A stretch of DNA of 64,000 nt from Macrostomum lignano (GCA_002269645.1 NIVC01002833.1:1-64000), one strand, 5' to 3'; counted from the first letter of the stretch, positions 5,935 through 51,000 are shown. Notes: generated by a model from the sequence alone, not told the origin. A program made the numbers and translations.

Positions 5935-12881
<6,947 letters not shown>

Positions 12882-18990: not shown

Positions 18991-21900
18991 TCAATAGATG
19001 CTGGTGAAGGCTGGTTCCGCCGCAGCAGAGGACATTTCTGCACCGGCTGTGCTTTGAGGTTTCTGTTGCTCCTGCTGATGCTGAGTAGCTTGCGAGCGCT
19101 GCATACCGGCCAAGATGAAGTGCCGAGTGGCCAGGAGGGCATCTGTGGCAGCCTGCGGGTTGACATGCGATCGGATTGGAATGCCGTGGCACTCACACAG
19201 GGTGCGCAGCTGCCCTGACTTTCTATGCCTTGGTGAGGGTTGGCCCTATAGCTGAGCTCCTCTGAGTGTTCTTCAAGAAATGCCATTAGCGTTCTAGGTG
19301 TGCTCATTGTGCTGTAATAAAATTAAAATACCCAGAAACTCCAAAAATTTCAAGTAATAGCAAAGCCTCCCAGGACCTTCAAAGGACTTCCAGCACCTTC
19401 AAGGACTCCCAACACCTTCAATGACTCCTAACAACATCAAGGACTCCCAACACCTTCAATGACTCCTAACACCTTCAAGGACTCCTAACACCTTCAATGA
19501 CTCCCAACACCTTCACTGACTCCTAACACCTTCAATGACTCCTAACAACTTCAATGACTCCTAACACCTTCAATGACTCCTAACAACTTCAAGGACTCCT
19601 AACACCTTCAAGGACTCCTAACACCTTCAATGACTCCCAACACCTTCAATGACTCCTAACACCTTCAATGACTCCTAACACCTTCAATGACTCCTAACAC
19701 CTTCAAGGACTCCTAACACCTTCAAGGACTCCTAACACCTTCAATGACTCCCAACACCTTCAATGACTCCTAACAACTTCAAGGACTCCTAACACCTTCA
19801 AGGACTCCTAACACCTTCAAGGACTCCTAACAACTTCAAGGACTCCTAACAACTTCAAGGACTCCCAACACCTTCACTGACTCCTAACACCTTCAATGAC
19901 TCCCAACACCTTCAATGACTACCAACACTTTCACTGACTCCTAACACCTTCAATGACTCCTAACAACTTCAATGACTCCTAACACCTTCAAGGACTCCTA
20001 ACACCTTCAAGGACTCCTAACACCTTCAAGGACTCTAACACCTTCAAGGACTCCTAACACCTTCAAGGACTCCTAACACCTTCAAGGACTCCTAACACCT
20101 TCAATGACTCCCAACACCTTCAATGACTCCTAACACCTTCAATGACTCCTAACACCTTCAATGACTCCTAACACCTTCAATGACTCCTAACACCTTCAAG
20201 GACTCCTAACACCTTCAATGACTCCCAACACCTTCAAGGACTCCTAACACCTTCAAGGACTCCTAACACCTTCAAGGACTCCTAACACCTTCAATGACTC
20301 CTAACACCTTCAAGGACTCCTAACACCTTCAATGACTCCTAACACCTTCAAGGACTCCTAACAACTTCAAGGACTCCTAACGACTTCAAGGACTCCTAAC
20401 ACCTTCAAGGACTCCTAACACCTTCAAGGACTCCTAACACTTTCAAGGACTCCTAACACCTTCAAGGACTCCTAACACCTTCAAGGACTCCTAACACCTT
20501 CAAGGACTCCTAACACCTTCAAGGACTCCTAACACCTTCAAGGACTCCTAACACCTTCAAGGACTCCTAACACCTTCAAGGACTCCTAACACCTTCAATG
20601 ACTCCTAACACCTTCAAGGACTCCTAACACCTTCAAGGACTCCTAACACCTTCAAGGACTCCTAACACCTCCAAGGACTCCCAACACCTCCAAGGACTCC
20701 CCCAAAGTCTTCATCTCTCATCGCCTCACCCGCAGCCTCCGTCTGGCATTGAACTCTCGCAATTTGTTCTGCGCCTCAGCCAGGCTGTCCTCTCGAGCAG
20801 CCAGCCCGCCAACCCACGGATGTCGGAGCGCCTGCCCAGCAGTCAGGCGAGCGTCGGCGTCCAGCACCAGTAGCCTCTCGATGAGGTCGCGCGCGTTCTT
20901 GGAGATGCCCGACCACCAGCGCTGGTCGAATGTGTACTGGGCACGCAGGATTCGACGGTACATGTCGCTGTCATTGTCCGCGTAAAACGGTTCGTAGCCT
21001 CCGAGGCTTTGGAGTGACGAAAGTGGATGGAGAAGACATGGGTGAGTGAAGTGAGGGGGTGTACGGGGTTAGGTGGGTGTAGGGTGAGGTGGGTGTAGGG
21101 GTGGGGTGGGTGTAGGGGTGAGGTGGGTGTAGGGTTGAGGTGGGTTTAGGGGTGAGGTGGGTGTAGGGGTGAGGTGGGTTTAGGGGTGAGGTGGGTGTAG
21201 GAGTGAGGTGGGTGTAGGGGTGAGGTGGGTGTAGGGGTTGAGGTGGGTGTAGGGGGTGAGGTGGGTGTAGGGGTGAGGTGCGTTTAGGGGTGAGGTGGGT
21301 TTAGGGGTGAGGTGGGTGTAGAGGTTAGGTGGGTGTAGGGTAAGGTGGGTGTAGGAGTGAGGTGGGTGTAGGGGTGAGGTGGGTGTAGGGTGAGGTGGGT
21401 GTAGGAGTGAGGTGGGTGTAGGGGTGAGGTGGGTGTAGGGTTGAGGTGGGTGTAGGGGTGAGGTGGGTGTAGGGTTGAGGTGGGTGTAGGGGTGAGGTGG
21501 GTGTAGGGGTGAGGTGGGTGTAGGGGTGAGGTGGGTGTAGGGTTGAGGTGGGTGTAGGGGTGAGGTGGGTGTAGGGGGGGAGGTGGGTGTAGGAGGGAGG
21601 TGGGTGTAGGGGTGAGGTGGGTGTAGGGGGTGAGGTGGGTTAGGGGTGAGGTGGGTCTAGGGGTGAGGTGGGTCTAGGGGTGAGGTGGGTGTAGGGGTGA
21701 GGTAGGTGTAGGGGTGAGGTGGTGTAGGGGGTGAGGTGGTGTAGGGGGGAGGTGGTTGTAGGGGGGAGGTGGGTGTAGGGGGGAGGTGGGTGTAGGGGGG
21801 AGGTGGGTGTAGGGAGTGACCTGGGTGTAGGGAATGAGGTCAATTAACTCGATACAAATAGCAATTACCAACAGAAAGTAAATTAGTAAAAACAAATAAC

Positions 21901-24900
21901 TTTTATTCAATAATATTGCATGATAAAACAAAAAAGTCTTATTAATGTAATCCAAGTTTAATAAATCCAAACCACCATTCAAGTGACTGCTGAAAATTAT
22001 AGTGCACCATTATGAGCAATATACGGTCATAAAAGTATCCCTGACTTTTTTGCGTCCCCATTGATATCCACACAAGGCCTGCGTTTGCCAACTATCGGGA
22101 AACGATCTCCATTCACTGCTATGAAAGGCGGAAGGCGCGTGAAGGCTGGTTGCTTAGCAACTAATCAAGTCAATTTGGTTTCTCTCAATAGGCAAATACG
22201 AGGTACTTGACTTAATTATATTATGCTTATAGATATGGAATCTCAATCAAGTGAGTAGCCTGCCACTAGCTTGGCATGGAAAATGATTAAAAACCGCTGA
22301 ATGATCGTATTTTTCTCACAGATCCTCGGTTGCTAGGCCAGCCTCCCAGATCCTCAGTTGCTGGGCCAGCCTCCCAGATCCTCAGTTGCTGGGCCAGCCT
22401 TCCAGATCCTCAGTTGCTGGGCCAGCCTCCCAGATCCTCAGTTGCTGGGCCAGCCTCTCAGATCCTCAGTTGCTGGGCCAGCCTCCCAGATCCTCAGTTG
22501 CTGGGCCAGCCTCCTAGATCCTCAGTTGCTGGGCTAGCCTCCCAGATCCTCAGTTGCTGGGCCAGCCTCCCAGATCCTCAGTTGCTGAGCCAGCCTCCTA
22601 GATCCCCAGTTGCTGAGCCAGCCTCCCAGATCCCCAGTTGCTATGACAGCCTCCCAGATCCTCAGTTGCTGGGCCAGCCTCCCAGATCCTCAGTTGCTGG
22701 GCCAGCCTCCCAGATCCCCAGTTGCTGGGCCAGCCTCCCAGATCCTCAGTTGCTGGGCCAGCCTCCCAGATCCTCAGTTGCTGGGCCAGCCTCTCAGATC
22801 CTCAGTTGCTGGGCCAGCCTCCCAGATCCTCAGTTGCTGGGCCAGCCTCTCAGATCCTCAGTTGCTGGGCCAGCCTCCCAGATCCTCAGTTGCTGGGCCA
22901 GCCTCCTAGATTCTCAGTTGCTATGCCAGCCTCTCAGATCCTCAGTTGCTGGGCCAGCCTCCCAGATCCTCAGTTGCTGGGCCAGCCTCTCAGATCCTCA
23001 GTTGCTGGGCCAGCCTCCCAGATCCTCAGTTGCTGGGCCAGCCTCCTAGATTCTCAGTTGCTATGCCAGCCTCCCAGATCCTTAGTTGCTGGGCCACCTC
23101 CAAGATCCTCAGTTGCTGGGCCAGCCTCCCAGATCTTCAGTTGCTGGGCCAGCCTCCCAGATCCCCAGTTGCTGAGCCAGCCTCCCAGATCCTCAGTTGC
23201 TAGGCTAGCCTCCTAGATCCTCAGTTGCTGGGCCAGCCTCTCAGATCCTCAGTTGCTGGGCCAGCCTCCCAGATCCCCAGTTGCTGAGCCAGCCTCCCAG
23301 ATCCCAGTTGCTGAGCCAGCCTCCCAGATCCTCAGTTGCTAGGCTAGCCTCCTAGATCCTCAGTTGCTGGGCCAGCCTCCCAGATCCTCAGTTGCTGGGC
23401 CAGCCTCCCAGATCCCCAGTTGCTGAGCCAGCCTCCCAGATCCCCAGTTGCTATGCCAGCCTCCCAGATCCTCAGTTGATGGGCCAGCCTCCCAGATCCT
23501 CAGTTGCTGGGCCAGCCTCTCAGATCCTCAGTTGCTGGGCCAGCCTCCCAGTTCCTCAGTTGCTGGGCCAGCCTCTCAGATCCTCAGTTGCTGGGCCAGC
23601 CTCCCAGATCCTCAGTTGCTGGGCCAGCCTCTCAGATCCTCAGTTGCTGGGCCAGCCTCCCAGATCCCCAGTTGCTATGCCAGCCTCCCAGATCCCCAGT
23701 TGCTATGCCAGCCTCCCAGATCCTCAGTTGCTGGGCCAGCCTCTCAGATCCTCAGTTGCTGGGCTAGCCTCCCAGATCCTCAGTTGCTGGGCTAGCCTCC
23801 CAGATCCTCAGTTGCTGGACCAGCCTCCCAGATCCTCAGTTGCTAGGCTAGCTTCCTAGATCCTCAGTTGCTGGGCCAGCCTCCCAGATCTTCAGTTGCT
23901 GGGCCAGCCTCCCAGATCCCCAGTTGCTGAGCCAGCCTCCCAGATCCTCAGTTGCTAGGCTAGCCTCCTAGATCCTCAGTTGCTGGGCCAGCCTCCCAGA
24001 TCCTCAGTTGCTGGGCCAGCCTCCCAGATCCTCAGTTGCTGGGCCAGCCTCTCAGATCCTCAGTTGCTGGGCCAGCCTCCTAGATTCTCAGTTGCTATGC
24101 CAGCCTCCCAGATCCTTAGTTGCTGGGCCACCTCCAAGATCCTCAGTTGCTGGGCCAGCCTCCCAGATCTTCAGTTGCTGGGCCAGCCTCCCAGATCCCC
24201 AGTTGCTGAGCCAGCCTCCCAGATCCTCAGTTGCTAGGCTAGCCTCCTAGATCCTCAGTTGCTGGGCCAGCCTCTCAGATCCTCAGTTGCTGGGCCAGCC
24301 TCCCAGATCCCCAGTTGCTGAGCCAGCCTCCCAGATCCCCAGTTGCTGAGCCAGCCTCCCAGATCCTCAGTTGCTAGGCTAGCCTCCTAGATCCTCAGTT
24401 GCTGGGCCAGCCTCCCAGATCCTCAGTTGCTGGGCCAGCCTCCCAGATCCCCAGTTGCTGAGCCAGCCTCCCAGATCCCCAGTTGCTATGCCAGCCTCCC
24501 AGATCCTCAGTTGCTGGGCCAGCCTCCCAGATCCTCAGTTGCTGGGCCAGCCTCCAGATCCTCAGTTGCTGGGCCAGCCTCCCAGATCCTCAGTTGCTGG
24601 GCCAGCCTCTCAGATCCTCAGTTGCTGGGCCAGCCTCCCAGATCCCCAGTTGCTATGCCAGCCTCCCAGATCCCCAGTTGCTGGGCCAGCCTCCCAGATC
24701 CCCAGTTGCTGGGCTAGCCTCCCAGATCCTCAGTTGCTGGGCCAGCCTCCCAGATCCCCAGTTTCTGGGCCAGCCTCCCAGATCCACAGTTGCTGGGCTA
24801 GCCTCCCAGATCCTCAGTTGCTGGGCCAGCCTCCCAGATCCCCAGTTGCTGGGCCAGCCTCCTAGATTCTCAGTTGCTATGCCAGCCTCCCAGATCCTCA

Positions 24901-27900
24901 GTTGCTGGGCCAGCCTCCCAGATCCCCAGTTGCTGGGCCAGCCTCCCAGATCCTCAGTTGCTGGGCTAGCCTCCCAGATCCTCAGTTGCTGGGCCAGCCT
25001 CCCAGATCCCCAGTTGCTGGGCCAGCCTCCTAGATTCTCAGTTGCTATGCCAGCCTCCCAGATCCTCAGTTGCTGGGCCAGCCTCCCAGATCCCCAGTTG
25101 CTATGCCAGCCTCCCAGATCCTCAGTTGCTGGGCCAGCCTCCCAGATCCTCAGTTGCTGGGCCAGCCTCCCAGATCCCAGTTGCTGGGCCAGCCTCCCAG
25201 ATCCCCAGTTGCTATGCCAGCCTCCCAGATCCTCAGTTGCTGGGCCAGCCTCCCAGATCCTCAGTTGCTGGGCCAGCCTCCCAGATCCTCAGTTGCTGGG
25301 CCAGCCTCCCAGATCCCCAGTTGCTATGCCAGCCTCCCAGATCCTTAGTTGCTGGGCCACCTCCAAGATCCTCAGTTGCTGGGCCAGCCTCCCAGATCCT
25401 CAGTTGCTGGGCCAGCCTCCCAGATCCCAGTTGCTGGCCAGCCTCCCAGATCCTCAGTTGCTGGGCCAGCCTCCCAGATCCCAGTTGCTGGGCCAGCCTC
25501 CAGATCCTCAGTTGCTGGGCCAGCCTCCCAGATCCTCAGTTGCTGGGCCAGCCTCCAGATCCTCAGTTGCTGGGCCAGCCTCCCAGATCCTCAGTTGCTG
25601 GGCCAGCCTCCCAGATCCTCAGTTGCTGGGCCAGCCTCCAGATCTCAGTTGCTATGCCAGCCTCCCAGATCCTCAGTTGCTGGGCCACCTCCAGATCCTC
25701 AGTTGCTGGGCCAGCCTCCCAGATCCTCAGTTGCTGGGCCAGCCTCCCAGATCCCAGTTGCTGAGCCAGCCTCCCAGATCCTCAGTTGCTAGGCAGCCTC
25801 CTAGATCCTCAGTTGCTGGGCTAGCCTCCCAGATCCTCAGTTGCTGGGCCAGCCTCCCAGATCCTCAGTTGCTGAGCCAGCCTCCTAGATCCCCAGTTGC
25901 TGAGCCAGCCTCCCAGATCCCCAGTTGCTATGCCAGCCTCCCAGATCCTCAGTTGCTGGGCCAGCCTCCCAGATCCTCAGTTGCTGAGCCAGCCTCCCAG
26001 ATCCCCAGTTGCTGGGCCAGCCTCCCAGATCCTCAGTTGCTGGGCCAGCCTCCCAGATCCTCAGTTGCTGGGCCAGCCTCTAGATCCTCAGTTGCTGGGC
26101 CAGCCTCCCAGATCCTCAGTTGCTGGGCCAGCCTCTCAGATCCTCAGTTGCTGGGCCAGCCTCCCAGATCCTCAGTTGCTGGGCCAGCCTCCTAGATTCT
26201 CAGTTGCTATGCCAGCCTCCCAGATCCTTAGTTGCTGGGCCAGCCTCCAGATCCTCAGTTGCTGAGCCAGCCTCCCAGATCTTCAGTTGCTGGGCCAGCC
26301 TCCCAGATCCCCAGTTGCTGAGCCAGCCTCCCAGATCCTCAGTTGCTAGGCCAGCCTCCCAGATCCTCAGTTGTTGGGCCAGCCTCTCAGATCCTCAGTT
26401 GCTGGGCCAGCCTCCCAGATCCCCAGTTGCTGAGCCAGCCTCCCAGATCCCCAGTTGCTGAGCCAGCCTCCCAGATCCTCAGTTGCTAGGCTAGCCTCCT
26501 AGATCCTCAGTTGCTGGGCCAGCCTCCCAGATCCTCAGTTGCTGGGCCAGCCTCCCAGATCCCCAGTTGCTGAGCCAGCCTCCCAGATCCCCAGTTGCTA
26601 TGCCAGCCTCCCAGATCCTCAGTTGCTGGGCCAGCCTCCCAGATCCTCAGTTGCTGGGCCAGCCTCCCAGATCCTCAGTTGCTGGGCTAGCCTCCCAGAT
26701 CCTCAGTTGCTGGGCTAGCCTCCCAGATCCTCAGTTGCTGGACCAGCCTCCCAGATCCTCAGTTGCTAGGCTAGCTTCCTAGATCCTCAGTTGCTGGGCC
26801 AGCCTCCCAGATCTTCAGTTGCTGGGCCAGCCTCCCAGATCCCCAGTTGCTGAGCCAGCCTCCCAGATCCTCAGTTGCTAGGCTAGCCTCCTAGATCCTC
26901 AGTTGCTGGGCCAGCCTCTCAGATCCTCAGTTGCTGGGCCAGCCTCCCAGATCCTTAGTTGCTGGGCCACCTCCAAGATCCTCAGTTGCTGGGCCAGCCT
27001 CCCAGATCTCAGTTGCTGGGCCAGCCTCCCAGATCCCAGTTGCTGGCCAGCCTCCCAGATCCTCAGTTGCTGGCTAGCCTCCTAGATCCTCAGTTGCTGG
27101 GCCAGCCTCCAGATCCTCAGTTGCTGGGCCAGCCTCCCAGATCCCCAGTTGCTGAGCCAGCCTCCCAGATCCCCAGTTGCTGAGCCAGCCTCCCAGATCC
27201 TCAGTTGCTAGGCTAGCCTCCTAGATCCTCAGTTGCTGGGCCAGCCTCCCAGATCCTCAGTTGCTGGGCCAGCCTCCCAGATCCCCAGTTGCTGAGCCAG
27301 CCTCCCAGATCCCCAGTTGCTATGCCAGCCTCCCAGATCCTCAGTTGCTGGGCTAGCCTCCCAGATCCTCAGTTGCTGGGCCAGCCTCCCAGATCCCCAG
27401 TTGCTGGGCCAGCCTCCCAGATCCTCAGTTGCTGGGCCAGCCTCCCAGATCCTCAGTTGCTGGGCCAGCCTCCCAGATTCCCAGTTGCTGGGCCAGCCTC
27501 CTAGATTCTCAGTTGCTGGGCCAGCCTCCCAGATCCTCAGTTGCTGGGCCAGCCTCCCAGATCCTCAGTTGCTGGGCCAGCCTCCCAGATCCTCAGTTGC
27601 TGGGCCAGCCTCCCAGATCCTCAGTTGCTGGGCCAGCCTCCCAGATCCCAGTTGCTGGGCCAGCCTCCTAGATCCAGTTGCTGGGCCAGCCTCCAGATCC
27701 TCAGTTGCTGGGCCAGCCTCTCAGATCCTCAGTTGCTGGGCCAGCCTCCCAGATCCTCAGTTGCTGGGCCAGCCTCTCAGATCCTCAGTTGCTGGGCCAG
27801 CCTCCCAGATCCTCAGTTGCTGGGCCAGCCTCCCAGATCCTCAGTTGCTGGGCCAGCCTCCAGATCCTCAGTTGCTGGGCCAGCCTCCCAGATCCTCAGT

Positions 27901-30815
27901 TGCTGGGCCAGCCTCCCAGATCCCCAGTTGCTGGGCCAGCCTCCCAGATCCACAGTTGCTGGGCTAGCCTCCCAGATCCTCAGTTGCTGGGCCAGCCTCC
28001 CAGATCCCAGTTGCTGGGCCAGCCTCCCAGATCCAGTTGCTATGCTGGGCAGCCTCCCAGATCCTCAGTTGCTGGGCCAGCCTCCCAGATCCCAGTTGCT
28101 GGGCCAGTTGCTCAGGGCCAGCCTCTCAGTTGCTGGCCATCCTCAGTTGCTGGCTGCCAGCCTCTCAGATTTTCAGTTGCTGCTCCACTACCTTTGACAC
28201 TGGGCTCAACCGACCTCATGTTCACTCGCATTTAAAGAATAAAAACACATCTCGCACAGAAAATGCCTATACAAAAGTCATGAGAAATTTTTTTCGCCCT
28301 AAGTCTCAACGATTATTCGTTCCACGCTCTCACATATTCGTTTCTAAGTCTTATTCTCCAGCTCTCTCTGTTTTATTGCCGCAGCAAAATGCAAATACAG
28401 CAGTGACTCGCTCTAAAACAAACTGAACCGGCCAGCAGTCGGCAACTTCAATCTTTATGTGAAGCTGTGTGGGCCTTTGTTTCTAAATTTAGCCTTAAAA
28501 GTTGGGGAGCTAATGTTAATTAATGGTACTCTATTATTGCTCCTTAGTATACCTCACATGCTTAAAGTAGTGCAATTAGCCATCATAATGCTACAAATTA
28601 GCTTGATTGCGTGAAATAATACCGAAGTAGTCATGAATTAAATCTCTAGCTCTACATGCTAGCATTGCGCACTATACCGACAATATGCACAATTTAGTCT
28701 AATTAGGCACTCCTAGCAGTGTTGCATCGATATTTAAATCCCAATAGTACACCACTTCACTCTCCCCACTTCATACCCACCTCATTCCCCAACCCTACAC
28801 CCACCTCATTCCCCAACTTTACACCCACCTCATTCCCCAACTTTACACCCACCTCACTCCCCAACTTTACACCCACCTCACTCCCCAACTTTACACCCAC
28901 CTCACGTCCTCACTCCCCAACCCTACACTCACCTCACTCTCCAACTTTACACCCACCTCACTCCCCAACTTTACACCCACCTCACTCCCCAACTTTACAC
29001 CCACCTCACGTCCTCACTCCCCAACCCTACACTCACCTCACTCTCCAACTTTACACCCACCTCACTCCCCAACTTTACACCCACCTCACTCCCCAACTTT
29101 ACACCCACCTCACGTCCTCACTCCCCAACCCTACACTCACCTCACTCTCCAACTTTACACCCACCTCACTCTCCAACTTTACACCCACCTCACTCCCCAA
29201 CTTTACACCCACCTCACTCCCCAACTTTACACCCACCTCACTCTCCAACCCTACACCCACCTCACTCCTCTACCCTACTCTACAGCCTCCAACAGCCACA
29301 TAGCCGCTTACAGAATAAAAGCAATGACTCCAACGCTCCACATGTCCATGGCGGTGCCACAGCCTCTGCGCAGCAGAACCTCAGGCGCACAATAGCCCGG
29401 AGTACCGCACACAGATCTCGTATGCACGTCAGAGTCGGCAATTTTGCTCAAACCGAAATCAGCTAAGGAAAGGAAGTGTTGAAAAGTGAAAATTTAGAAC
29501 TTTAAAATCATTATTGAAACGAGCGTATCCAATATGGTTATTTGCAACTCACCAATTTTCAATTTGGCCTCTTCGCGTTCGTCTTCGTAAAGCAAATTCT
29601 CCGGCTAAAATCAAATGGGACCAAGTTTTCATATTCAGTAGGGGCGTTTGGTGTGTATTGTAACTTTCATGCAGTTAGAAACCTTGAGATCGCGATGAAT
29701 AATGCCCCGCTCGTGCAGATACCTCAAGCCGTCTAGCAATTGTCCAAAGCATTGGGACGCGTCTTTCTCGTTGTAACTGCCGCGACTGACAATTCTGTAA
29801 GTTTAGTCACGGAAAGCAGCTGTCATTTGTTGGCTAAAAGAGTTTTATCATTTCCAATCATTAGTTCCAGCCCATAAAGATATTACATGATCGTCCAATT
29901 CAAGCGCGCAAATACTGTACTCGTACGCAGACACTCTCTGTGCCTTGAGCCTTTCTTCTGTTCAGAAATCAGAAATTAAATTAAATTTAGATGAGAATGG
30001 GCCCAAGACAAATATGTTATCTGTTTTCCTACAAAGCTTCACAAAGTACAAAACCTTACCTGTCAAACAGTTCCCCACCTGTGACCAATTCCAGGACCAT
30101 GAAGAAATGATTTGGCGTTTCAAACACTTCCTTTAATCTAATCTGTTGGAGGTAGTTTAAATCAAAGTTTTTTTAGATAAGCTGTTCTTAGACAGAAAAT
30201 CTATTACATTTTTTAGCAAATATGAAGTGGCTCACAATATTTTCATGACTGACACTGAACAGGATACCAATCTCAGCTGTTACTATTCTCTTATCCACCT
30301 GGATAAAAAGTAATGTTTTTGATTTTTCAAATAAAACAGGAAAGTTGACTATAATTTATGTTCTTAGTGAATATACTTTAACCTGGCAAACTATACTCAC
30401 CTTCTTTTGTATCACTTTTGCTGCCCATTTTTCACTTGAGCCAATTCTGTTGCACTCATGCACAACAGATGTTCCACCCCTTTAATGTGAATTTTTTAAG
30501 TTTATATTATGTAAAGTTGTAGCAACAATAAAATAAATTTTATCTCAAAAAATTATTTTAAGGAAAAAAATACAATATACATTTGTTCAATGAATTTATT
30601 GGCAGTAGGGATCCTCAAAAATTGTCCATGTAACACACTTTAAATCTTTATTTACTGAATTTAACCACTATTAATATCACCACTGTGTGCTTATGTTGTT
30701 GATTAAAGTTGATCACTCAATGTATAACTTACTTTCCCAATTCCTTTCCTAAGTCGTAAACGTCTTCAAAACGAATGTCTTTGATGCTTTCATACAGCCA
30801 ATAGTCCGAGTTCAT
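18991..30815 (-). CDS. CAMK4: Ca2+/calmodulin-dependent protein kinase, CaMKIV/CaMKI family, 353 aa
   Basis: Exons 30815-30733, 30479-30401, 30298-30236, 30142-30060, 29794-29683, 29604-29553, 29462-29312, 21006-20730, 19152-18991 total 1062 nt and are open. Motifs: [71 protein letters not shown], and the autoregulatory [14 protein letters not shown]. The symbol reflects family resemblance. Confidence 0.93.
19370..20700. repeat. 19-bp minisatellite, about 70 copies (last kinase intron)
   Basis: Unit TCCTAACACCTTCAAGGAC. Confidence 0.95.
21050..21830. repeat. 17-bp G-rich minisatellite
   Basis: Unit GGGGTGAGGTGGGTGTA. Confidence 0.93.
22318..28190. repeat. 28-bp satellite, about 210 copies, with ~1034-bp higher-order structure
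   Basis: Unit CAGTTGCTGGGCCAGCCTCCCAGATCCT. Identical variant blocks sit 1034 bp apart (ORF track 22946-23203 vs 23980-24237). Confidence 0.97.
28765..29280. repeat. 24-bp C-rich minisatellite
   Basis: Unit ACTTTACACCCACCTCACTCCCCA. Confidence 0.93.
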
Positions 30816-39700: not shown

Positions 39701-42700
39701 ACAGGTAGTCTAACAGGTAGTCGAACAGGTATTCGAACACGTAGTCGAACACGTAGTCTAACAGGTAGTCTAACAGGTATTGAACAGGTAGTTTAAAGGG
39801 TAGTCTAACAGGTAGTTTAACAGGGTAGTCTAACAGGTAGTCTAAGTGGTAGTCTAATAGGTAATCGAACAGGTAGTCGAACACGTAGTCGAACAGGTAG
39901 TCTAACAGGTAGTCTAACAGGTAGTCGAACATGCAATTTAACAAGTAGTCTACGAGTAACAGGTAGTCTAGCAGGCTAGTCTAACAGGTATTCTAGCAGG
40001 CTAGTCTAACAGGTATTCTAGCAGGCTAGTCTAACAGGTAGTCTAACAGGTAGTCGAACAGGTAGTCTAACAGGCTAGTCTAACAGGTAGTCGAACAGGT
40101 AATCTAACCGGTAGTATAAAAGGTAGACTAACAGGTTATCTAACAGGCTAGTCTAACAGGTAGTCTAGCAGCCAGTTTCAAGAGCAGTCCAACTTGCACT
40201 TCCCAAAGCGCAGCAGCCCCCCAATCCCCAACTCCCAGCTCTGTCCTTTGTCCGCCTGGCACCGGACCGCGGCTGGACGACAGCCAAGCCGGACAGCCGG
40301 ACCCAGCTGAAGCTGACAGCCAATCTTGTCGACAGTTCCGGGCAAGTCACCGAAGCTGACAATCGAACTGTGGTGGCAACATCGCTAGACCTGCCGCATC
40401 TCATTGGCAGCCTGCCAGATCCGGCCGGCAACGCCCCGGAGACGTCGGGCCTCATCGCGACTCGAATCGTTCAGGCCAGCCTCTTCGGAAGTTCGGACGG
40501 CCCGGGAAGTCGCAGGCTGACAGAGGCGTCGGTTCTGGTCGTGCTGCCGCATCTGAGCGGCAGGCAGTGGGTCGGAGTCCACAGGACCTGCGCCTACCTG
40601 AGGCCGGGTACTGGGCTGCTCGACTCCCACGGTTGCCGGGTGGTGCCCGAGCTCAGCAGCGCAGTGAAAACCGCCTGCCTGTGCAACCATCTCAGCAGTT
40701 TTGCTGTTGTCGTGTCGCCGAGCGACTCCTGGGCTACGATCGAGTCCAAGCAGCTGCTGATGGAGCACTCTGTGCCGCTGGCAGTTCTCACCTACGTCTG
40801 CCTGGGCCTGTCAATCCTCTGCCTGCTGCTCACCTGCGTCACCTATGCGGCTGTCCGAGTGAAGACTCAGGCCGCCGATCACTCCATAGCAACTCTGCAT
40901 CGGGTGCACAGCTGCCTGTCTGCCTGCCTGCTGGGCGCGCACGCCCTTTTTCTAGCCGGGTTCGAGCGCGGGACCACATTCGGCGCGTTGGCCTGCAAGA
41001 TTGTGTCGGGAGCCGCTGTGTACCTCTTTCTCGCCGTTTTCTGCTGGCTGCTTTGCGAAGGCTTCATGTACACCAAGAGCCTCATTGTGGTGCTGCCAGG
41101 AGTAGACAGCACCTTCGCCAAGGTGGGCAAAGGGGTTAAACTGAGATAGGCAGCGGAGTGGGGTGGATCCAGGGAGTGAGGTGGGTGCAGGGAGTGAGGT
41201 GGGTGAAGGAGTGAGGTTGTGCAGGGAGTGAGGTGAGGCAGGGAGTGAGGTGAGGCAGGGAGTGAGGTGGGGCAGGGAGTGAGGTGGGGCAGGGAGTGAG
41301 GTGGGGCAGGGAGTGAGGTGGGGCAGGGAGTGAGGTGGGTGCAGGGAGTGAGGTGGGTGAAGGAGTGAGGTTGGTGCAGTGAGTGGAGTGGTTTGAGGTG
41401 AGGCAGGGAGTGAGGTGGGTGTAGGAGTGAGGTAGGTGCAGGAGTGAGGTGGGTGCAGGTGTGAGGCGGGTGTTGAAAGGCGTCAACACGAGCCCGTTGT
41501 CCCGGAACCCATCACCAGGTGAAGTTCCGGCACTATTGCCTGCTGAGCATCCTGGCTCCAGCCGCAATTCTCGTGCCGGTGGCATTGATCCGGTCAGACC
41601 AGATGATCCAATACCGGGCCAACCTGGAAGGCTACAGCGCCAGCCTGGAGGAGCCGAGCACCTGCTGGCTGTCCGACCGGAACGGCACTTATTGGGCCTT
41701 CCTCGGCCCGGTCCTGTTTGTCTGTGCCGTCAACCTCGCCATCTTTGTGGCCATTCTGGTCAAACTGTCCAGGAGGGATCTCGGAACCGGAGGCGATGAC
41801 GGAGGCTGCAACGGAAACAGCGGCGGTACAGCGGGACTCTTCGGCCTCGGAGAGTTCATGAGACGGCAGGTGGGTTGCCGTTTGGCCGAGCCTTGGTCTC
41901 GAAGAGATTCGTCTCAATGAGATTCGTCTCAATGAGATTCGTCTGAATGAGATTCGTCTCAATGAGATTCGTCTGAATGAGATTCGTCTCAATGAGATTC
42001 GTCTCGAAGAGATTCGTCTCAATGAGATTCGTCTCAATGAGATTCGTCTCGATGAGATTCGTCTCGATGAGATTCGTCTCAATGAGATTTGTCTCAATGA
42101 GATTCGTCTCAATGAGATTTGTCTCAATGAGATTCGTCTCAATGAGATTTGTCTCAATGAGATTCGTCTCAATGAGATTCGTCTCAATGAGATTCGTCTC
42201 AATGAGATTTGTCTCAATGAGATTCGTCTCAATGAGATTTGTCTCAATGAGATTCGTCTCAATGAGATTCGTCTCGATGAGATTCGTCTCGATGAGATTC
42301 GTCTCGATGAGATTCGACTCAATTACGAAAGCATTACATTATAATTCAGAATGGACTATTCTCTATCCAATCCCCCAGGTGAAGCTGTCAATCACGCTGG
42401 CCTCGCTGCTCGGGCTCACCTGGCTGCTGTGCATTCTATTCTTCTTTGCTGAGGGCCGGTTCCTGCTCGCGGCTCACTACCTGTTCGTGCTGCTCACCGG
42501 CCTGCAGGGCTGCTTCATCTTCGCCACCCAGATCGCCGCTCACGAGAGAATTCGCGAGGCCTGGGAGCGGCGCCTGCTGAGCAGCGGCGGCCGCTGCCTC
42601 CCCAGCAGCCTTCGCCGCTGTCTGGAGAGACGGCGCACGGACAGAATCAGCGGCGCCTGCGGCAAGCAGCAGCTGCAGCAGCAGAAGTTGAACTCCAGAA

Positions 42701-43772: not shown

Positions 43773-43835
<63 letters not shown>

Positions 43836-43949
43836 GGCAGACAGACAGACAGACAGACACACACAGACAGACAGACAGACAGACACTAAGACAGACAGAC
43901 ACTAAGACAGACAGACGGACAGACACTAAGACAGACAGACAGACAGACT

Positions 43950-44003
<54 letters not shown>

Positions 44004-45322
44004 TAGACAGACACTAAAACACTAAGACAGATATTAAGACAGAAACTGGGACAGACACTAACACACTGAGGCAGACACTGGGACGACAGAGACAGGCACT
44101 GAGACAGGCACTGAGACAGACACTGAGACAGACACTGAGACAGACACCGAGACAGGCACTGAGACAGGAACTGAGACAGACACTGAGACAGACACCGAGA
44201 CAGGCACTGAGACAGACACTGAGGCAGACACTGAGGCAGACACTGAGACAGACACTGAGACAGGCACTGAGACAGACACTGACACACTGAGGCAGACACT
44301 GGGACGACAGAGACGGGCACAGAGACAGACACTGAGACAGACACCGAGACAGGCACTGAGACAGACACTGAGGCAGACACTGAGACAGACACCGAGACAG
44401 AAACTGAGACAGGTACTGAGACAGGCACTGAGACAGACACTGAGGCAGACACTGAGACAGGCACTGAGACAGACACTGACACACTGAGGCAGACACTGGG
44501 ACGACAGAGACGGGCACAGAGACAGACACTGAGACAGGAACTGAGACAGACACTGAGACAGACACCGAGACAGGCACTGAGACAGACACCGAGACAGACA
44601 CTGAGACAGGCACTGAGACAGACACTGAGGCAGACACTGAGACAGGCACTGAGACAGACACTGACACACTGAGGCAGACACTGGGACGACAGAGACGGGC
44701 ACAGAGACAGACACTGAGACAGGAACTGAGACAGACACTGAGACAGACACCGAGACAGGCACTGAGACAGACACTGAGGCAGACACTGAGACAGACACCG
44801 AGACAGACACTGAGATAGACGCTGAGAAAGACACTGACACAGACACAAAAAGTCATTAAGACAGACACTGCGAAGGTGTTACTCACATTCACACATTCTA
44901 TTTAAAGTGTCACCCCAGCTGCATGATCGTACATACGGATTTCGAATATTTATTCAGTTTCCATCACCAGAATCACTGCCAGTTATTAAATATTATCTTA
45001 TCCCCGGATGGTGAACTTCCTCACTGGCACCCCCGCCTCACGCATGCAGTCTGACAGCCACTCGATGGCTCCGATTTACCGCGGCACTGCTCAGACTGAG
45101 GAAGTCAGCTTCGTCACCTCATCACCGGCGGCAGCCGCTCCTCCTGGTAATGATCGACAGAGAGCCGAGCCAATTAAAGTTGCCATGGCAACCACGATTA
45201 GCCTGGGCGATATTCAGTGCGCCTGCGGCTGCGGCAGCGCAAATGACGGCCAGTGCGACAATGGCTTGGACGAGGAGGACTGGCACACGGCCGACATCAT
45301 GCCTCCCGTTGCTGAGGCCTGA
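33726..45322 (+). CDS. Adhesion GPCR (GAIN/GPS plus 7TM, secretin-like class)
   Basis: Exons 33726-34407 (signal peptide MPPYAILLSIILLL), 36472-36614, 37252-37597, 40176-41122 (GPS CAYLRPGTGLLDSHGC...CLCNHLSSFAVVV; TM1-3, FCWLLCEG), 41519-41869 (CWLS..YWAFLGP), 42379-42741 (LLGLTW..LQGCFIF) are phase-consistent. The terminal exon is uncertain: 45050-45322, or about 43606-43745. Confidence 0.92.
34465..34685. repeat. GAGTGACA(G/C)AGA-type minisatellite
   Basis: 10-12-bp units. The same family occurs at 59620-59930. Confidence 0.85.
35750..35945. repeat. 24-bp minisatellite in a GGGA/TCCC-rich low-complexity tract
   Basis: Unit GGATTTCCCTGGGGATACCCTTTC. Confidence 0.8.
35982..36341 (+). mobile_element. 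Full-length tRNA-derived SINE with TSD
   Basis: tRNA-like head GGGGCCGTAGCCCAGCGG (A-box) and GGCTCGATTCC (B-box), AATAAAAAAAA tail, and 14-bp direct repeat AATCCCCTTGAGAT at 35968-35981 and 36342-36355. Confidence 0.85.
36900..37200. repeat. Degenerate ~20-bp minisatellite
   Basis: TTTGAGGTCATTGTAGAATA units. Confidence 0.75.
37600..38716. repeat. (TGAC)n followed by a 10-bp array TAGTCACTCA
   Basis: Directly visible tandem units. Confidence 0.95.
39225..40165. repeat. 12-bp minisatellite
   Basis: Unit TAGTCTAACAGG and variants. Confidence 0.93.
41165..41465. repeat. ~18-bp G-rich minisatellite
   Basis: GCAGGGAGTGAGGTGGG units. Confidence 0.88.
41900..42320. repeat. 15-bp hairpin-unit minisatellite, about 28 copies
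   Basis: Unit ATGAGATTCGTCTCA (TGAGA-TTCG-TCTCA inverted repeat). Confidence 0.95.
42815..43390. repeat. 16-bp minisatellite
   Basis: Unit GGTCATTGAGTTGATT. Confidence 0.95.
43755..44860. repeat. (ACAG)n grading into a 12-bp GACACTGAGACA array
   Basis: A ~180-220-bp higher-order block marked by CTGGGACGACAGAGAC recurs 4 times. Confidence 0.92.
45179..45192. promoter_or_regulatory. RFX X-box, perfect palindrome GTTGCCATGGCAAC
   Basis: Exact consensus match inside the putative last exon of the adhesion GPCR. Confidence 0.35.
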
Positions 45323-48084: not shown

Positions 48085-51000
48085 TCATCCCAGGCGCGAC
48101 AGCAAAGCAGCAGCTGTGAGTCCACCGACCCAGCCTCCGGCACTGATGAAGCCGTTTGAAGCCGAGTTCTGATTATAGCCGAACATGGCATCAGCAACTG
48201 ACTTGTAGTCGGTCACAGAGCTGACGCTGACGCCGGGTAGACCGCCGCTGATTGAAGAGTTTCCAGAGTTGATGGAGGCGGTCAGAGCGCTGGCTGAGAG
48301 ACTGCTGCCTGAGGCTGCGGAAGCTGCAAATCGTTTACGTTGAATGCTTAGCGTTTCTACTGAAACTGCACCAACCTACTACACCCACTCCGCTCCTACA
48401 CCCACCCCACTCCTGCACCCACCCCACTCCTGCACCCACCCACTCCTGCACCCACCTCACTCCTGCACCCACCTCACTCCTGCACCCACCTCACTCCTGC
48501 ACCCACCCCACTGCTGCACCCACCTCACTCCTGCACCCACCTCACTCCTGTACCCACCACACTCTTGCACCCACCCCACTCCTGCACCCACCTCACTCCT
48601 GCACCCACCCCATTCCTACACCAACCTCACAAGAGGTCGTCAATTTCAGCAATCAAACTTTGTCCGCCTACCTGCCCGCTTCTTTCGTCCACTTCCGGCG
48701 GCAGAGGAGGCGCATAGACTGTTTCCGGTCGGGGGCTCAGCATAGACGGCAACCTCAAGGTCGCCCGAGTCAGCTGTTTTAATCGAGTAGTCCACGTAGT
48801 AGAGTTCAGCTGAGGACAGCAGAGTTGTGGAGGCCAGGTCGCCAGCCCCGCTGCTGGAGACAATCGGGCAGCAACGGGCGGGATCGGCTCGGCAGAAGGT
48901 GTTGATGGCGGAGGCCAGCAAGGTTCGCAGGGTGGGCCAGACATCGCGGACGAACTGGGGAAGTGTTGGAAGATAGGTAGTGATCTTTCGGTTCATATTT
49001 GTTTATCGATAATCCAATAGCATCCGCCCATTATTTCTGGTCCCATCCTGCAGCATCCGCCCCCTCATTTCCGGTCCCATCCTAAAGCATCCACCCCTCA
49101 TTTCCGGTCCCAACCTAAAGCATCCGCCCCTCATTTCCAGTCCCAACCTAAAGCATCCGCCCTCTCATTTTCGGTCCCATCCTGCAGCATCCGCTCCCTC
49201 ATTTCCGGTCCCAACCTAAAGCATCCGCCCCTCATTTCCGGTTCTATCTTGCAGCATCCGCTCCTCATTTCCGGTCCCATACTATAGCATCCGCTCCCTC
49301 ATTTCCAGTCCCATCCTGCAGCATCCGCTCCCTCATTTCCGGTCCCATCCTGCAGCACCCGCTCCCTCATTTCCGGTCCCATCCTACAGCTTAATAGCTC
49401 AATTTCCGGTTCAATCACCGGAAACAGAAGATAAGCCGGTTGTATCCCTGATTCCCTCATCATCTCCCCAGCTGCTCACCCCGCCGTATCCCAGCGGCAC
49501 TCGGGCGCAGCTGCTGCCGGTGCAGAAGTCGAAGCTGCTGCGCAGTCGCAGCAGCACCCCGTTGGAGTAAGCCGTCACGGCCAGCTGGCACCGGGGCCCG
49601 GTGAAATTTGCCGGGCACCGGCAGGCGCTGCAGCTGGAGTTGTCGGACTCGACGCCGCCGTTCAGGCAGGGCGTGCCGGCTGCCGCGCAGGCACCGCAGG
49701 TTGAAGGCGGCCCAGCCGACAGGGACGGCTTTGCTGTGAGCAAGTTTAATTTAGATGGCCCTTTGCAAATTTTTCTACTGTTAGTAGGAATACTGATTCT
49801 TCCCCATGTTCCTCTCCTTTTTCATCTCTCTCTCCTTCCACATCTCCTTCTCCATCTCCTCCACCTCCCTCTTCTTCCCCATTTCCCTCTTCATCCCCAC
49901 CTCCCTCTTTATCCCTACCTCTCTCTCCTTCCCCATCTCCTTTTCCATCACCATCTCCCTCTCCTTCCCCATCTCCTTCTCCATCACCATCTCCCTCTCC
50001 TTCCCCATCTCCTTCTCCTTCCCCATCTCCCTCTCCTTCCCCATCTCCCTCTCCTTCCCCATCTCCCTCTCCTTCCCCATCTCCCTCTCCTTCCCCATCT
50101 CCCTCTCCTTCCCCATCTCCCTCTCCTTCCCCATCTCCCTCTCCTTCCCCATCTCCCTCTCCTTCCCCATCTCCCTCTCCTTCCCCATCTCCCTCTCCTT
50201 CCCCATCGCCAATCCCACGCAGCGAACGCTACTCACTGGAGCAGTCGCTACCCGCATAGCCGACAGGGCAATCGCACTGGCAGACGGGCACTGGCGAGGC
50301 GGTCCGATTATCTATGGCCGAGCCGCAGTTTTTGCAGACCACGGAGCAGGCTAAAATACGTGATTCAGTTGAAAATTTTGCCTTATAAAGTTTACTGCGC
50401 TACATATCGGCGAGTTGATTGAATTTTGAAATTATGGCTTAGATCAAACTGTCAATCATTCTATGACTCATTATGACTTACCAGGATTTCCTTCGCGTGC
50501 TATGAGCTGAGCGTCAGTGGCCAGGCTGCCATTAACACAAAGTCCATTTAGGCAGTAGCCAGCAGTTGTGGGGCAGGCTGAGCATGGCTCACCGGCCGTG
50601 TAGATGTGGCTGGGGTACCTGCGGCAGTTTGACAACTGATGACTTAGCGTTCTCCAACGCTCTTACCTACATCCAATGTCTCTCTTTTCCAACACCCTTA
50701 CCCCCAATGTGCATGCCTCCCTTCTCTAACACCCTTACTTCGATGTACATGGCCTCTCTTCCCTAACACCCTTAACCCTAATGTACATGACCTCCCTTCT
50801 CTAACACCCTTACCCCGATGTACATGGCCTCTCCTCTCCAACACCCTTACCCCCGATGTACATGGCCTCTCCTCTCCAACACCCTTACCCCCGATGTACA
50901 ATGCCTCTCCTCTCCAACACCCTTACCCCCGATGTACATGGCCTCTCCTCTCCAACACCCTTACCCCCGATGTACATGGCCTCTCCTCTCCAACACCCTT

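What the first reader, a model, noticed from the sequence alone, without database searches (positions are those of the whole stretch)
21007..29311. Complementary minisatellite arms at both ends of an 8.3-kb intron: candidate intron-bridging RNA structure
Seen: the largest CaMK intron has a 24-bp array about 30 nt inside the donor (28765-29280) and a 17-bp array about 45 nt inside the acceptor (21050-21830). They share the complementary 14-mer TACACCCACCTCAC / GTGAGGTGGGTGTA in about 20 and about 45 copies, and they enclose a 5.9-kb satellite. The two arrays differ in unit length, so this is not a simple inverted duplication. Known: in teleost introns, complementary (GT)n/(AC)n repeats at intron ends bridge splice sites. 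Inference: an analogous system built from minisatellites may let this animal splice satellite-filled introns.
Basis: partly seen in the sequence, partly recalled or inferred. Interest (0 to 1): 0.85.

Follow-up and report, generated by a model that had tools for sequence, protein, structure and literature searches.

The report
Inverted minisatellite pair in flatworm intron
Two complementary repeat arrays really do sit at both ends of an 8.3-kb intron of a flatworm (Macrostomum lignano) kinase gene and should pair in the RNA, but nearby genes suggest an accidental pairing of two members of a common local repeat family, not a dedicated splicing device.

Summary
Intron 7 of a CaMKIV-like gene (minus strand, 29311..21007, 8305 nt) carries a 24-nt array starting 43 nt after the donor. 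A 17-nt array ends 44 nt before the acceptor. They are reverse complements over 14-17 nt per unit and enclose a 5.8-kb 28-bp satellite. Folding predicts that the arms, unstructured alone, zip into a roughly 500-nt interrupted duplex.

The "system" reading fails the local controls.
- Both arms belong to a 17-nt-unit family (core GGAGTGAGGTGGGTG) with seven arrays in introns of four neighbouring genes, in both orientations.
- Four of them are solo arrays in 350-720-nt introns.
- Two other inverted array pairs flank exons, not introns.
- Four other introns of 1.6-2.6 kb, 28-84% tandem arrays, have no complementary ends.
- A spacing of 30-50 nt from the splice sites is the norm for all arrays here.
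- The intron position is ancient (same codon and phase in an annelid and a cnidarian), so the arrays are later fillings.

Best reading: an incidental inverted pair that may fortuitously bridge the intron. The genome-wide test could not be run.

The parts
21007..29311 (-). Intron 7 of a CaMKIV-like gene (8305 nt, GT..AG, phase 2 inside the codon after Ile in ...AFIL|LGGYEPFY)
   Evidence: tblastn of the M. lignano models P0001/P0002. Sequence reading. GT/AG check. Same position and phase in the Owenia and Nematostella orthologues.
28748..29268 (-). 5' arm. The sense RNA is G-rich, with unit AAGUUGGGGAGUGAGGUGGGUGUA (24 nt, about 21 copies, 104-nt higher-order repeat). It starts 43 nt after the donor.
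   Evidence: It carries 20 GTGAGG, 17 GTGGGT and 14 GTAAAG pseudo-donor hexamers. Self-fold energy is only -7.4 kcal/mol.
21051..21832 (-). 3' arm. The sense RNA is C-rich and 75% pyrimidine, with unit CCCUACACCCACCUCAC (17 nt, 46 copies). It ends 44 nt before the acceptor and is part of a 651-nt AG-free zone.
   Evidence: Self-fold energy is -3.0 kcal/mol.
22315..28107 (-). 28-bp satellite, 208 copies (5.8 kb). It is strongly self-folding as RNA (-0.54 kcal/mol per nt).
28108..28747 (-). Unique AT-rich spacer between the 5' arm and the satellite. Apart from its first ~80 nt, a degenerate continuation of the 28-bp satellite, it matches nothing else in the window and is not an inverted copy of the other spacer.
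21833..22314 (-). Unique AT-rich spacer between the satellite and the 3' arm.
29312..29462 (-). CaMK exon 7 (ADFGLSKI...VGVIAFIL), upstream of the big intron.
20730..21006 (-). CaMK exon 8 (LGGYEPFY...NARRRLR), downstream of the big intron. A cryptic in-frame AG lies at 20969-20968.
10261..10576 (+). Same-core array (41-nt unit, G-rich in the sense RNA), alone in a 540-nt intron of an iGluR-like gene.
11031..11684 (+). Same-core array (40-nt unit, G-rich in the sense RNA), filling the 717-nt iGluR-like intron 11016-11732.
12182..12446 (+). Same-core array in inverted orientation (17-nt unit, C-rich in the sense RNA). It lies in the NEXT intron (11893-12474), 28 nt from its acceptor, so it is complementary to the previous array across exon 11733-11892.
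41155..41472 (+). Same-core array (17-nt unit, G-rich in the sense RNA), alone in the 396-nt adhesion-GPCR intron 41123-41518. It lies 32 nt from the donor and 46 nt from the acceptor.
48382..48630 (-). Same-core array (17-nt unit, G-rich in the sense RNA), alone in a 348-nt intron (48671..48324) of a CAP/SCP-domain gene.

Best explanation
**What it is.** The two arms are two members of a local family of G-rich minisatellites. The basic unit is 17 nt and the shared core is GGAGTGAGGTGGGTG. This family has settled, in either orientation, in introns of at least four neighbouring Macrostomum lignano genes.

**How it arose.** The arms lie in an ancient CaMKIV intron that was probably about 90 nt long, like its six array-free sister introns. 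Tandem-array growth inflated it to 8.3 kb. The growth came from slippage or unequal exchange of the two arms plus a 5.8-kb 28-bp satellite. It stopped about 40-45 nt short of each splice site, where the splicing signals begin. Their opposite orientation is most simply one of two equally likely outcomes.

**What it does.** As a physical consequence, the G-rich 5' arm and the C-rich, AG-free 3' arm are predicted to anneal in the pre-mRNA. Neither has a competing structure of its own. The result would be a roughly 500-nt duplex of helices no longer than 17 bp, looping out about 7 kb and placing donor and acceptor side by side. This may fortuitously ease splicing of the gene's one very long intron. 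Nothing here shows that it is required, selected, or part of a general device.

**Shown:** the arrays, the gene model, the family, the controls and the thermodynamic prediction.

**Inferred:** the history of inflation, the accidental orientation, and pairing in vivo.
For: - **Family membership.** The 12-mer GTGAGGTGGGTG occurs in seven arrays: 10261, 11031, 21051 and 41155 on the + strand, and 12182, 28748 and 48382 on the - strand. Aligned units share GG(A/G)GTGAGGTGGGTG, and four arrays have 17-nt units.
- **All seven arrays are intronic, in four genes**.
- **Orientation looks random.** Related array pairs in the window are 17 direct and 15 inverted.
- **No enrichment.** Own-end complementarity is 1/14 and shuffled pairings 13/182.
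- **Across-exon inverted pairs exist.** The iGluR-like pair has an RNAduplex energy of -335 kcal/mol and the CAP pair -297 kcal/mol.
- **Long array-rich introns lack complementary ends.** These are CaMK I8 (1577 nt), GPCR G1a (2064 nt), GPCR G2 (2578 nt) and iGluR Ax (2426 nt). The G2 arrays do not self-fold either.
- **The spacing is generic.** The first array lies 1-79 nt from the donor in 11 of 14 introns. The last array lies 3-61 nt from the acceptor in 10 of 14. Five short array-bearing introns (348-717 nt) keep 63-99 nt of non-array DNA, against 78-102 nt for four of the six array-free introns.
- **The intron is ancient.** Owenia and Nematostella have it in the same codon and phase.
- **The duplex is predicted.**
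- **Recent array turnover.** The 5' arm has a 104-nt higher-order repeat at 94% identity.
Against: - The sample is one 64-kb window, in which 47% of the DNA is tandem arrays. That is far above the 12.8% of another M. lignano contig and the published 15% (PMC5730564). The local null may therefore not represent the genome.
- The arms share more than the family core. The full 17-nt unit of the 3' arm is contained in the 24-nt unit of the 5' arm, and the TA-extended 14-mer is almost private to them. They may be sister arrays rather than independent arrivals.
- The polarity (G-rich at the 5' end, C-rich at the 3' end) matches the G-triplet/C-triplet pattern that Lin et al. reported as four-fold enriched in structured human introns.
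- This is the longest intron in the window, and the only one with bridging arms.
- Both arms are remarkably free of competing structure.
Confidence: 0.6

Rival explanations
1. Functional intron bridging. The arm duplex forms co-transcriptionally once the 3' arm is made. It shortens the effective donor-acceptor distance from 8.3 kb to roughly 120 nt plus a stem. This measurably improves the efficiency or fidelity of splicing in an animal whose introns are mostly short and probably intron-defined, and selection keeps the arrangement.
For: - Cofold energy is -717 kcal/mol, and neither arm has a self-structure.
- 424 of 521 nt of the 5' arm pair with the 3' arm. The pairing extends into the degenerate flanks up to a few nt from both splice sites.
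- This is the largest intron in the window, and the other introns of the gene are 78-265 nt or 1.6 kb.
- Precedents exist: (AC)m-(GT)n introns and the G-triplet/C-triplet pattern (PMC4691745), and yeast 5'ss-branchpoint pairing as cited there.
- The arms share the whole 17-nt unit.
Against: - There is no enrichment over shuffled pairings in the window.
- Equally strong complementary pairs flank exons in two neighbouring genes, where pairing would favour exon skipping or back-splicing.
- Introns of 1.6-2.6 kb, 28-84% tandem arrays, have no bridging arms.
- The 5' arm must stay free during the transcription of about 7 kb.
- The duplex would bury part of the 5' splice-site region and the branch/pyrimidine region.
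- Conservation could not be tested.
Confidence: 0.25
2. A single composite insertion. In this reading the 8.2 kb between the two splice-site-proximal stubs is one foldback-type mobile element, or one inverted-duplication event, whose termini are the inverted arrays. The complementarity would then be a structural relic of transposition or rearrangement.
For: - The inverted tandem-repeat arms are of unequal length and surround a different central region, as in Drosophila FB elements (own knowledge).
- Everything sits at one point of a formerly ~90-nt intron.
- The arms are each other's closest relatives in unit sequence.
Against: - No target-site duplication was found. The only shared 7-mer has one copy inside exon 8.
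- The seven family arrays share no flanks or termini.
- Most family members are solo arrays.
- The inner spacers are unrelated and are not repeated elsewhere in the window.
- No transposase-like ORF was seen among the ORFs listed for the region.
Confidence: 0.08
3. Source of double-stranded RNA. The excised intron or pre-mRNA hairpin would feed an endo-siRNA or ADAR-type pathway, in the way hairpin-RNA loci built from inverted tandem repeats do in flies. It would regulate genes that carry the same core arrays.
For: - A long intramolecular duplex is predicted.
- The same core is present in the introns of three neighbouring genes.
Against: - The helices are short, at most 17 bp, with 56 helices interrupted by asymmetric loops. 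This makes a poor Dicer substrate.
- The targets would be intronic only.
- There are no small-RNA data and no Rfam match in the window.
Confidence: 0.04
4. Assembly artefact. The inverted arrangement would be a long-read foldback or chimeric mis-assembly in a repeat-rich genome.
For: M. lignano assemblies are known to be difficult because of simple repeats and duplications (PMC5730564).
Against: - There is no palindromic symmetry. The arms differ in unit length (17 vs 24 nt), in copy number and in higher-order structure. The spacers are unrelated.
- The flanking exons are intact, collinear and in frame with the annotated model P0001.
Confidence: 0.02

Closest known systems
(AC)m-(GT)n structured introns of teleosts and lamprey (Lin et al. 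2016, Genome Res 26:12, PMC4691745)
   Same: Complementary repeat expansions lie at opposite ends of one intron. They are predicted to form a very stable stem that juxtaposes the 5' and 3' splice sites. As in those introns, individual instances need not be conserved, because repeats turn over fast.
   Different: - The repeats here are 24- and 17-nt minisatellite units (about 520 and 780 nt long), not dinucleotides.
- The intron is 8.3 kb with a 5.8-kb satellite inside. The exemplar intron that Lin et al. analysed in detail fell in a 170-nt size bin.
- About 43 nt of ordinary sequence remain at each splice site.
- The defining statistical signature (co-occurrence across introns but not across exons) is not seen in this window.
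- U2AF2 independence and a requirement for splicing are untested.
G-triplet (5' end) / C-triplet (3' end) complementary pattern in structured human introns (same paper, section 10)
   Same: The polarity is the same. G-runs lie just downstream of the donor, and complementary C-runs lie just upstream of the acceptor.
   Different: That pattern lies within the first and last 40 nt and comprises a few triplets. Here there are hundreds of nt of arrays, starting beyond nt 43.
5' splice site-branchpoint pairing in long yeast introns (Goguel & Rosbash 1993; Libri et al. 1995; Howe & Ares 1997; cited in PMC4691745)
   Same: Intramolecular pairing shortens the effective distance in unusually long introns of an organism with mostly short introns.
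   Different: The yeast elements are short unique complementary segments, shown genetically to matter. Here the elements are tandem arrays and there are no functional data.
Core-sharing hypervariable minisatellite families (human core GGAGGTGGGCAGGARG, listed in PMC9069542; Jeffreys-type, from own knowledge)
   Same: These are many G-rich arrays at different loci. They have different unit lengths (17, 24, 40 and 41 nt here) but a common 15-nt core. The 8-mer GAGGTGGG is shared with the human core.
   Different: The organism differs. All copies here are intronic and regionally clustered. Hypervariability and any link to recombination are untested. The 8-mer match may be compositional chance.
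Inverted repeats flanking exons that drive exon circularisation or skipping (e.g. inverted Alu pairs; own knowledge)
   Same: Two of the three inverted array pairs in this window flank an exon: the iGluR-like exon 11733-11892 and CAP exon 51548-51873.
   Different: The finding itself is the within-intron configuration. No circRNA data are available.
Foldback (FB) transposons of Drosophila (own knowledge)
   Same: Long inverted arms made of short tandem repeats, with arms of unequal length and a variable centre.
   Different: No target-site duplication, no conserved termini and no second copy were found. Solo arrays of the same family are commoner than pairs.

Membership tests
Repeat-bridged structured introns ((AC)m-(GT)n type) | Complementary repeat tracts at opposite boundaries of the same intron | tested here: met
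   Arms at intron nt 44-564 and 7480-8261 of 8305. 274 ten-mers of the last 1 kb have their reverse complement in the first 1 kb.
Repeat-bridged structured introns ((AC)m-(GT)n type) | Predicted bridging structure much more stable than controls | tested here: met
   The MFE is -1334 kcal/mol, against -875 with the 3' arm inverted. 424 of 521 nt of the 5' arm pair to the 3' arm. The arms alone fold at -7.4 and -3.0 kcal/mol, and cofold at -717. The satellite was shortened to 560 nt for the fold.
Repeat-bridged structured introns ((AC)m-(GT)n type) | Co-occurrence of the complementary repeats across introns exceeds a null and is not seen across exons | tested here: not met
   At window scale only. 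Own intron 1/14, shuffled pairings 13/182, odds ratio 1.0. Two inverted pairs lie across exons and one across an intron. The genome-wide version is not testable with these tools.
Repeat-bridged structured introns ((AC)m-(GT)n type) | Repeats are AC/GT dinucleotide runs that obscure the branch point and polypyrimidine tract | tested here: not met
   The units are 24 and 17 nt. 44 nt of non-array sequence precede the acceptor. The 3' arm is itself 75% pyrimidine and AG-free for 651 nt.
Repeat-bridged structured introns ((AC)m-(GT)n type) | Structure required for correct splice-site pairing; U2AF2-independent splicing | not testable with these tools
   This needs minigenes, in-vitro splicing or knock-down in M. 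lignano.
Core-sharing minisatellite family | Tandem arrays with units of about 10-100 nt at several loci, sharing a core but differing in unit length | tested here: met
   Seven arrays with units of 17, 17, 17, 17, 24, 40 and 41 nt, all with GG(A/G)GTGAGGTGGGTG.
Core-sharing minisatellite family | Strong purine/G strand asymmetry | tested here: met
   GC skew is +0.87 at 21-22 kb and -0.37 to -0.41 at 28-30 kb.
Core-sharing minisatellite family | Length hypervariability between individuals or haplotypes | not testable with these tools
   There is no second haplotype or homeologous copy. The M. lignano CaMK models are UniRef-only and could not be placed on contigs.
Foldback-type transposon | Inverted terminal arms composed of tandem repeats | tested here: met
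Foldback-type transposon | Target-site duplication and conserved termini shared by several copies | tested here: not met
   No direct repeat of 8 nt or more at the outer borders. No shared flanks among the seven arrays. The spacers are unique in the window.

The most novel reading that the evidence does not exclude
Macrostomum lignano, whose genome is exceptionally rich in intronic tandem arrays, may tolerate its longest array-filled introns because pairs of complementary minisatellites at the intron ends zip together. This would restore a short effective intron. It would be a minisatellite-based, convergently evolved counterpart of the teleost (AC)m-(GT)n introns. This CaMKIV intron would be one instance, and the across-exon pairs would be circRNA or exon-skipping by-products of the same repeat dynamics.
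Probability: 0.12. Interest if true: 0.7.

Novelty: new member of a known kind. Interest (0 to 1): 0.3.

Why it matters
If the pairing were functional, structure-assisted splice-site pairing would extend from vertebrate dinucleotide repeats to invertebrate minisatellites. It would also help to explain how a genome with mostly 80-100-nt introns copes with kilobases of satellite inside genes.

As it stands, the value is more modest. The window gives a clean picture of how tandem arrays inflate ancient short introns up to the limits set by the splicing signals. It documents a core-sharing, 5'-splice-site-like minisatellite family spreading through the introns of neighbouring genes. It also supplies a concrete, cheap genome-wide test, with the necessary across-exon and neighbourhood controls, that would settle the bridging hypothesis.

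Tried and rejected
- **Simple inverted duplication or palindrome.** Rejected. The inner spacers share no inverted similarity, and the arms differ in unit and in higher-order structure.
- **Foldback or other transposable-element carrier.** No target-site duplication, no terminal inverted repeats beyond the arrays, and no conserved flanks among the seven family arrays.
- **New intron created by an insertion (introner-like).** Rejected. The intron position and phase are shared with Owenia and Nematostella.
- **Known structured RNA in the intron or window.** No Rfam hit at gathering thresholds.
- **A general rule that intronic arrays self-fold to compact the intron.** Rejected. Some arrays do self-fold (28-mer, 15-mer, 24-mer and 19-mer units). 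Others, including the 2 kb of arrays in GPCR intron G2 and all the core-family arrays, do not.
- **Canonical G-quadruplexes in the 5' arm.** None with loops of 7 nt or less, and 6 with loops of 9 nt or less.
- **Fetching the homeologous or paralogous CaMK locus to test conservation.** Failed. P0002 is not on any contig on record, my spliced protein was not accepted, and the adhesion-GPCR search returned only UniRef-only relatives.
- **A wider M. lignano sample.** Only one extra locus was reachable (L001, 22 kb). It has 12.8% tandem repeats and no core-family array.
- **My first model of GPCR 'intron G1'.** It was wrong, because an extra exon lies at 36472-36614. I corrected it before the final test.

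Full report
**Source and gene**

The exons that flank the feature encode a CaMKIV-like kinase. A 197-aa query built from them hits Macrostomum lignano UniRef models at 97% (P0001) and 82% (P0002). It hits CaMKIV of many animals at 50-60%. tblastn of those models onto the window gives 100% identity over individual exons. A second gene in the window is 100% identical to another M. lignano model, P0121. The window is therefore M. lignano DNA.

The kinase gene lies on the minus strand and has nine exons. Its introns are 253, 102, 93, 265, 78, 90, 8305 and 1577 nt, all GT..AG. It splits the codon after Ile in ...VGVIAFIL|LGGYEPFY.... The junction is the one present in model P0001.

- TRF finds the 17-bp array at 21051-21832 (46 copies), the 24-bp array at 28748-29268 (about 21 copies, with a 104-nt higher-order repeat at 94% identity), and a 28-bp satellite of 208 copies at 22315-28107.
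- The 14-mer GTGAGGTGGGTGTA occurs 20 times in the left array on the + strand and 14 times in the right array on the - strand. It occurs once elsewhere, and none is expected by chance. With up to 2 mismatches the counts are 42 and 19.
- In the pre-mRNA the donor-proximal arm is G-rich (AAGUUGGGGAGUGAGGUGGGUGUA). The acceptor-proximal arm is C-rich (CCCUACACCCACCUCAC).
- The arms begin 43 nt after the donor and end 44 nt before the acceptor.
- The two unique spacers inside the intron are not inverted copies of each other and are not repeated elsewhere in the window.

**The RNA duplex is thermodynamically very plausible**

- Alone, the arms are almost devoid of structure. The 5' arm folds at -7.4 kcal/mol over 521 nt and the 3' arm at -3.0 kcal/mol over 782 nt. 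Together they cofold at -717 kcal/mol.
- I folded the intron with the satellite cut down to 560 nt. In that fold, 424 of the 521 nt of the 5' arm pair with the 3' arm, and none pairs elsewhere. The MFE is 459 kcal/mol lower than in a control with the 3' arm inverted.
- The duplex consists of 56 helices of at most 17 bp. It continues through the degenerate outer units to within a few nt of both splice sites.
- The satellite in between folds on itself at -0.54 kcal/mol per nt.

**The arms are not a special pair; they belong to a family**

The 12-mer GTGAGGTGGGTG marks seven arrays in the window. Those at 10261, 11031, 21051 and 41155 are on the + strand. Those at 12182, 28748 and 48382 are on the - strand. 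Their aligned units share GG(A/G)GTGAGGTGGGTG. Four arrays have the basic 17-nt unit. The 5' arm has 17+7 nt, and two arrays have 40-41 nt.

I built gene models around them.

- **iGluR-like gene (+ strand).** The model is P0121, with exons at 7645-7695, 10122-10185, 10726-11015, 11733-11892 and 12475 onward.
- **Adhesion GPCR (+ strand).** It has GPS and 7tm_2 Pfam hits, and its exons were mapped with the paralogue P0125.
- **CAP/SCP-domain gene (- strand).** It is homologous to P0122 and P0123.

All seven arrays are intronic. Four of them are solo arrays that almost fill introns of 348-717 nt (iGluR Ay, iGluR A2, GPCR G3, CAP I3x). The seven arrays share no flanking sequence.

**Local controls for the bridging interpretation**

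For the 14 array-bearing introns of the four genes, I counted the 10-mers in the last 1 kb (or the 3' half, for shorter introns) whose reverse complement occurs in the first 1 kb (or the 5' half).
   - Only intron 7 is complementary to itself (274 ten-mers).
   - However, 13 of 182 pairings between different introns are complementary too. That is the same rate as 1 of 14 (odds ratio 1.0).
   - The 3' arm is as complementary to the 5' parts of GPCR G3, iGluR Ay, iGluR A2 and CAP I3x (96-132 ten-mers) as the family relationship predicts.
2. **Pairs across exons.**
   - The G-rich array of iGluR intron A2 and the C-rich array of intron A3 flank the 160-nt exon 11733-11892.
   - The two inverted 38-nt-unit arrays of the CAP gene (51877-52237 and 50680-51058) flank the 326-nt exon 2.
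   - Their predicted duplexes are strong (-335 and -297 kcal/mol).
   - In the teleost system, the decisive signature was co-occurrence across introns but not across exons (PMC4691745). Here the tally is one across an intron and two across exons.
3. **Other long, array-rich introns lack complementary ends.** These are CaMK I8 (1577 nt), GPCR G1a (2064 nt), GPCR G2 (2578 nt) and iGluR Ax (2426 nt). Arrays make up 84% and 80% of I8 and G2, but only 28% and 47% of G1a and Ax. The arrays of G2 do not self-fold either.
4. **Orientation among related arrays is even.** There are 17 direct and 15 inverted pairs.
5. **The spacing from the splice sites is generic.**
   - The first array starts 1-79 nt from the donor in 11 of 14 introns.
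   - The last array ends 3-61 nt from the acceptor in 10 of 14 introns.
   - Five short array-bearing introns (348-717 nt) keep 63-99 nt of non-array DNA. That matches four of the six array-free introns of the kinase gene (78-102 nt; the other two are 253 and 265 nt).
   - The 43+44 nt left in intron 7 fit the same picture.

**History**

The intron is old. In the Owenia fusiformis and Nematostella vectensis CaMKIV genes, an intron interrupts the same codon in the same phase (ATC TT|gtaagt...cag|A CTT TGT and ATC CT|gtaagt...aag|G CTA TGC). The arrays are therefore later fillings of an ancestral intron, most likely a short one, not a new intron created by an insertion. No target-site duplication or conserved terminus supports a foldback-type element. 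The 104-nt higher-order repeat in the 5' arm shows recent array turnover.

**Verdict**

The feature is real, and the predicted duplex is impressive. The simplest account is an incidental inverted pair from a locally abundant intronic minisatellite family, sitting in an ancient intron inflated by arrays. The pairing may well form and could help fortuitously. I give about 0.25 to a real positive effect on this intron, and about 0.12 to a genome-wide device.

The caveats are real.

- This is one unusually repeat-dense window. Tandem arrays make up 47% of it, against 12.8% in another M. lignano contig that also lacks the family and the published 15% (PMC5730564).
- The arms are each other's closest relatives.
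- Their G-at-5', C-at-3' polarity matches a pattern reported as enriched in structured human introns.
- The homeologous copy and the rest of the genome were out of reach.

**Relation to what is known**

- In how it might work, the feature is closest to the (AC)m-(GT)n introns. It is not a member of that class, because the repeat type differs and the across-intron enrichment criterion is not met here.
- As a sequence family, it is a classical core-sharing G-rich minisatellite family. Its core even contains the 8-mer GAGGTGGG of the human hypervariable minisatellite core (the motif list in PMC9069542). I treat that resemblance as a lead only.
- I found no description of this family, or of repeat-bridged introns, in Macrostomum in the searchable literature.

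Noticed in passing
window 10261-10576, 11031-11684, 12182-12446, 21051-21832, 28748-29268, 41155-41472, 48382-48630: A minisatellite family with a shared 15-nt core (GGAGTGAGGTGGGTG) and unit lengths of 17, 24, 40 and 41 nt. All seven arrays are intronic, in four neighbouring unrelated genes. Five are G-rich in the sense RNA. Both C-rich-sense arrays lie next to acceptors. No flanks are shared. The family is absent from 22 kb of another M. lignano contig (L001). How it spreads between introns without copying exons is unexplained.
   Followed up: yes
window 50680-51058 and 51877-52237: Two inverted arrays with the same 38-nt unit lie in introns 2 and 1 of a CAP/SCP-domain gene (minus strand). 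They flank its 326-nt exon 2 (51548-51873), and the predicted duplex is -297 kcal/mol. This is an exon-looping geometry, so the exon is a candidate for skipping or circularisation.
   Followed up: partly
window 11031-11684 and 12182-12446: Complementary core-family arrays lie in two consecutive introns of the iGluR-like gene. They flank the 160-nt exon 11733-11892, and the predicted duplex is -335 kcal/mol.
   Followed up: partly
window 10767-10769: There is an in-frame TAA in the iGluR-like exon where the otherwise near-identical M. lignano model P0121 has Glu (...NFT*DKESEAR against ...NFTEDKESEAR). This copy may be a pseudogenised duplicate, an allele or a base error.
   Followed up: no
window 21007-21658: There is a 651-nt AG-free zone upstream of the intron-7 acceptor, made by the C-rich arm. 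Every unit carries a branch-point-like CUCAC, so distant or multiple branch points are conceivable.
   Followed up: partly
window 28748-29268 (sense strand): The G-rich arm carries 51 5'-splice-site-like hexamers (20 GTGAGG, 17 GTGGGT, 14 GTAAAG). Real donors in this window use the same hexamers (GTGAGG at 20729, GTGGGT at 41870). The family core looks like a duplicated donor site or U1-binding site. It also contains GAGGTGGG, which is part of the human hypervariable minisatellite core.
   Followed up: partly
window 37598-37663 and 39210-40175: In adhesion-GPCR intron G2, a (TGAC)n run begins inside the donor itself (GTGAGTGAGTGACTGAC...). A (GTCTAACAGGTA)n array, whose unit looks like a branch site plus AG|GT, ends 4 nt before the acceptor. 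Arrays can reach, and perhaps supply, splice signals.
   Followed up: partly
window 20968-20969: There is a cryptic in-frame acceptor AG 39 nt inside CaMK exon 8. The paralogue models P0007 and P0009 read ...YIL|DMYRRIL, lacking the 13 residues LCGYEPFY....., as if the equivalent site were used. P0002 also joins at 20967. This suggests error-prone or alternative 3' splice-site choice at this intron in the gene family.
   Followed up: partly
whole window; L001: 47% of the window is tandem arrays (52 merged intervals). This compares with 12.8% in L001 and the published 15% for simple plus tandem repeats in the genome. Array-bearing short introns keep 63-99 nt of non-array DNA, the size of most array-free introns.
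   Followed up: yes
window 43779-44846 and 58080-58985: Two inverted arrays of the same 12-nt unit (AGACAGACACTG and GTGTCTGTCTCA) lie 13 kb apart, with (CAGA)n/(AGAC)n runs at 8755, 43754 and 60779. The gene context was not worked out.
   Followed up: no
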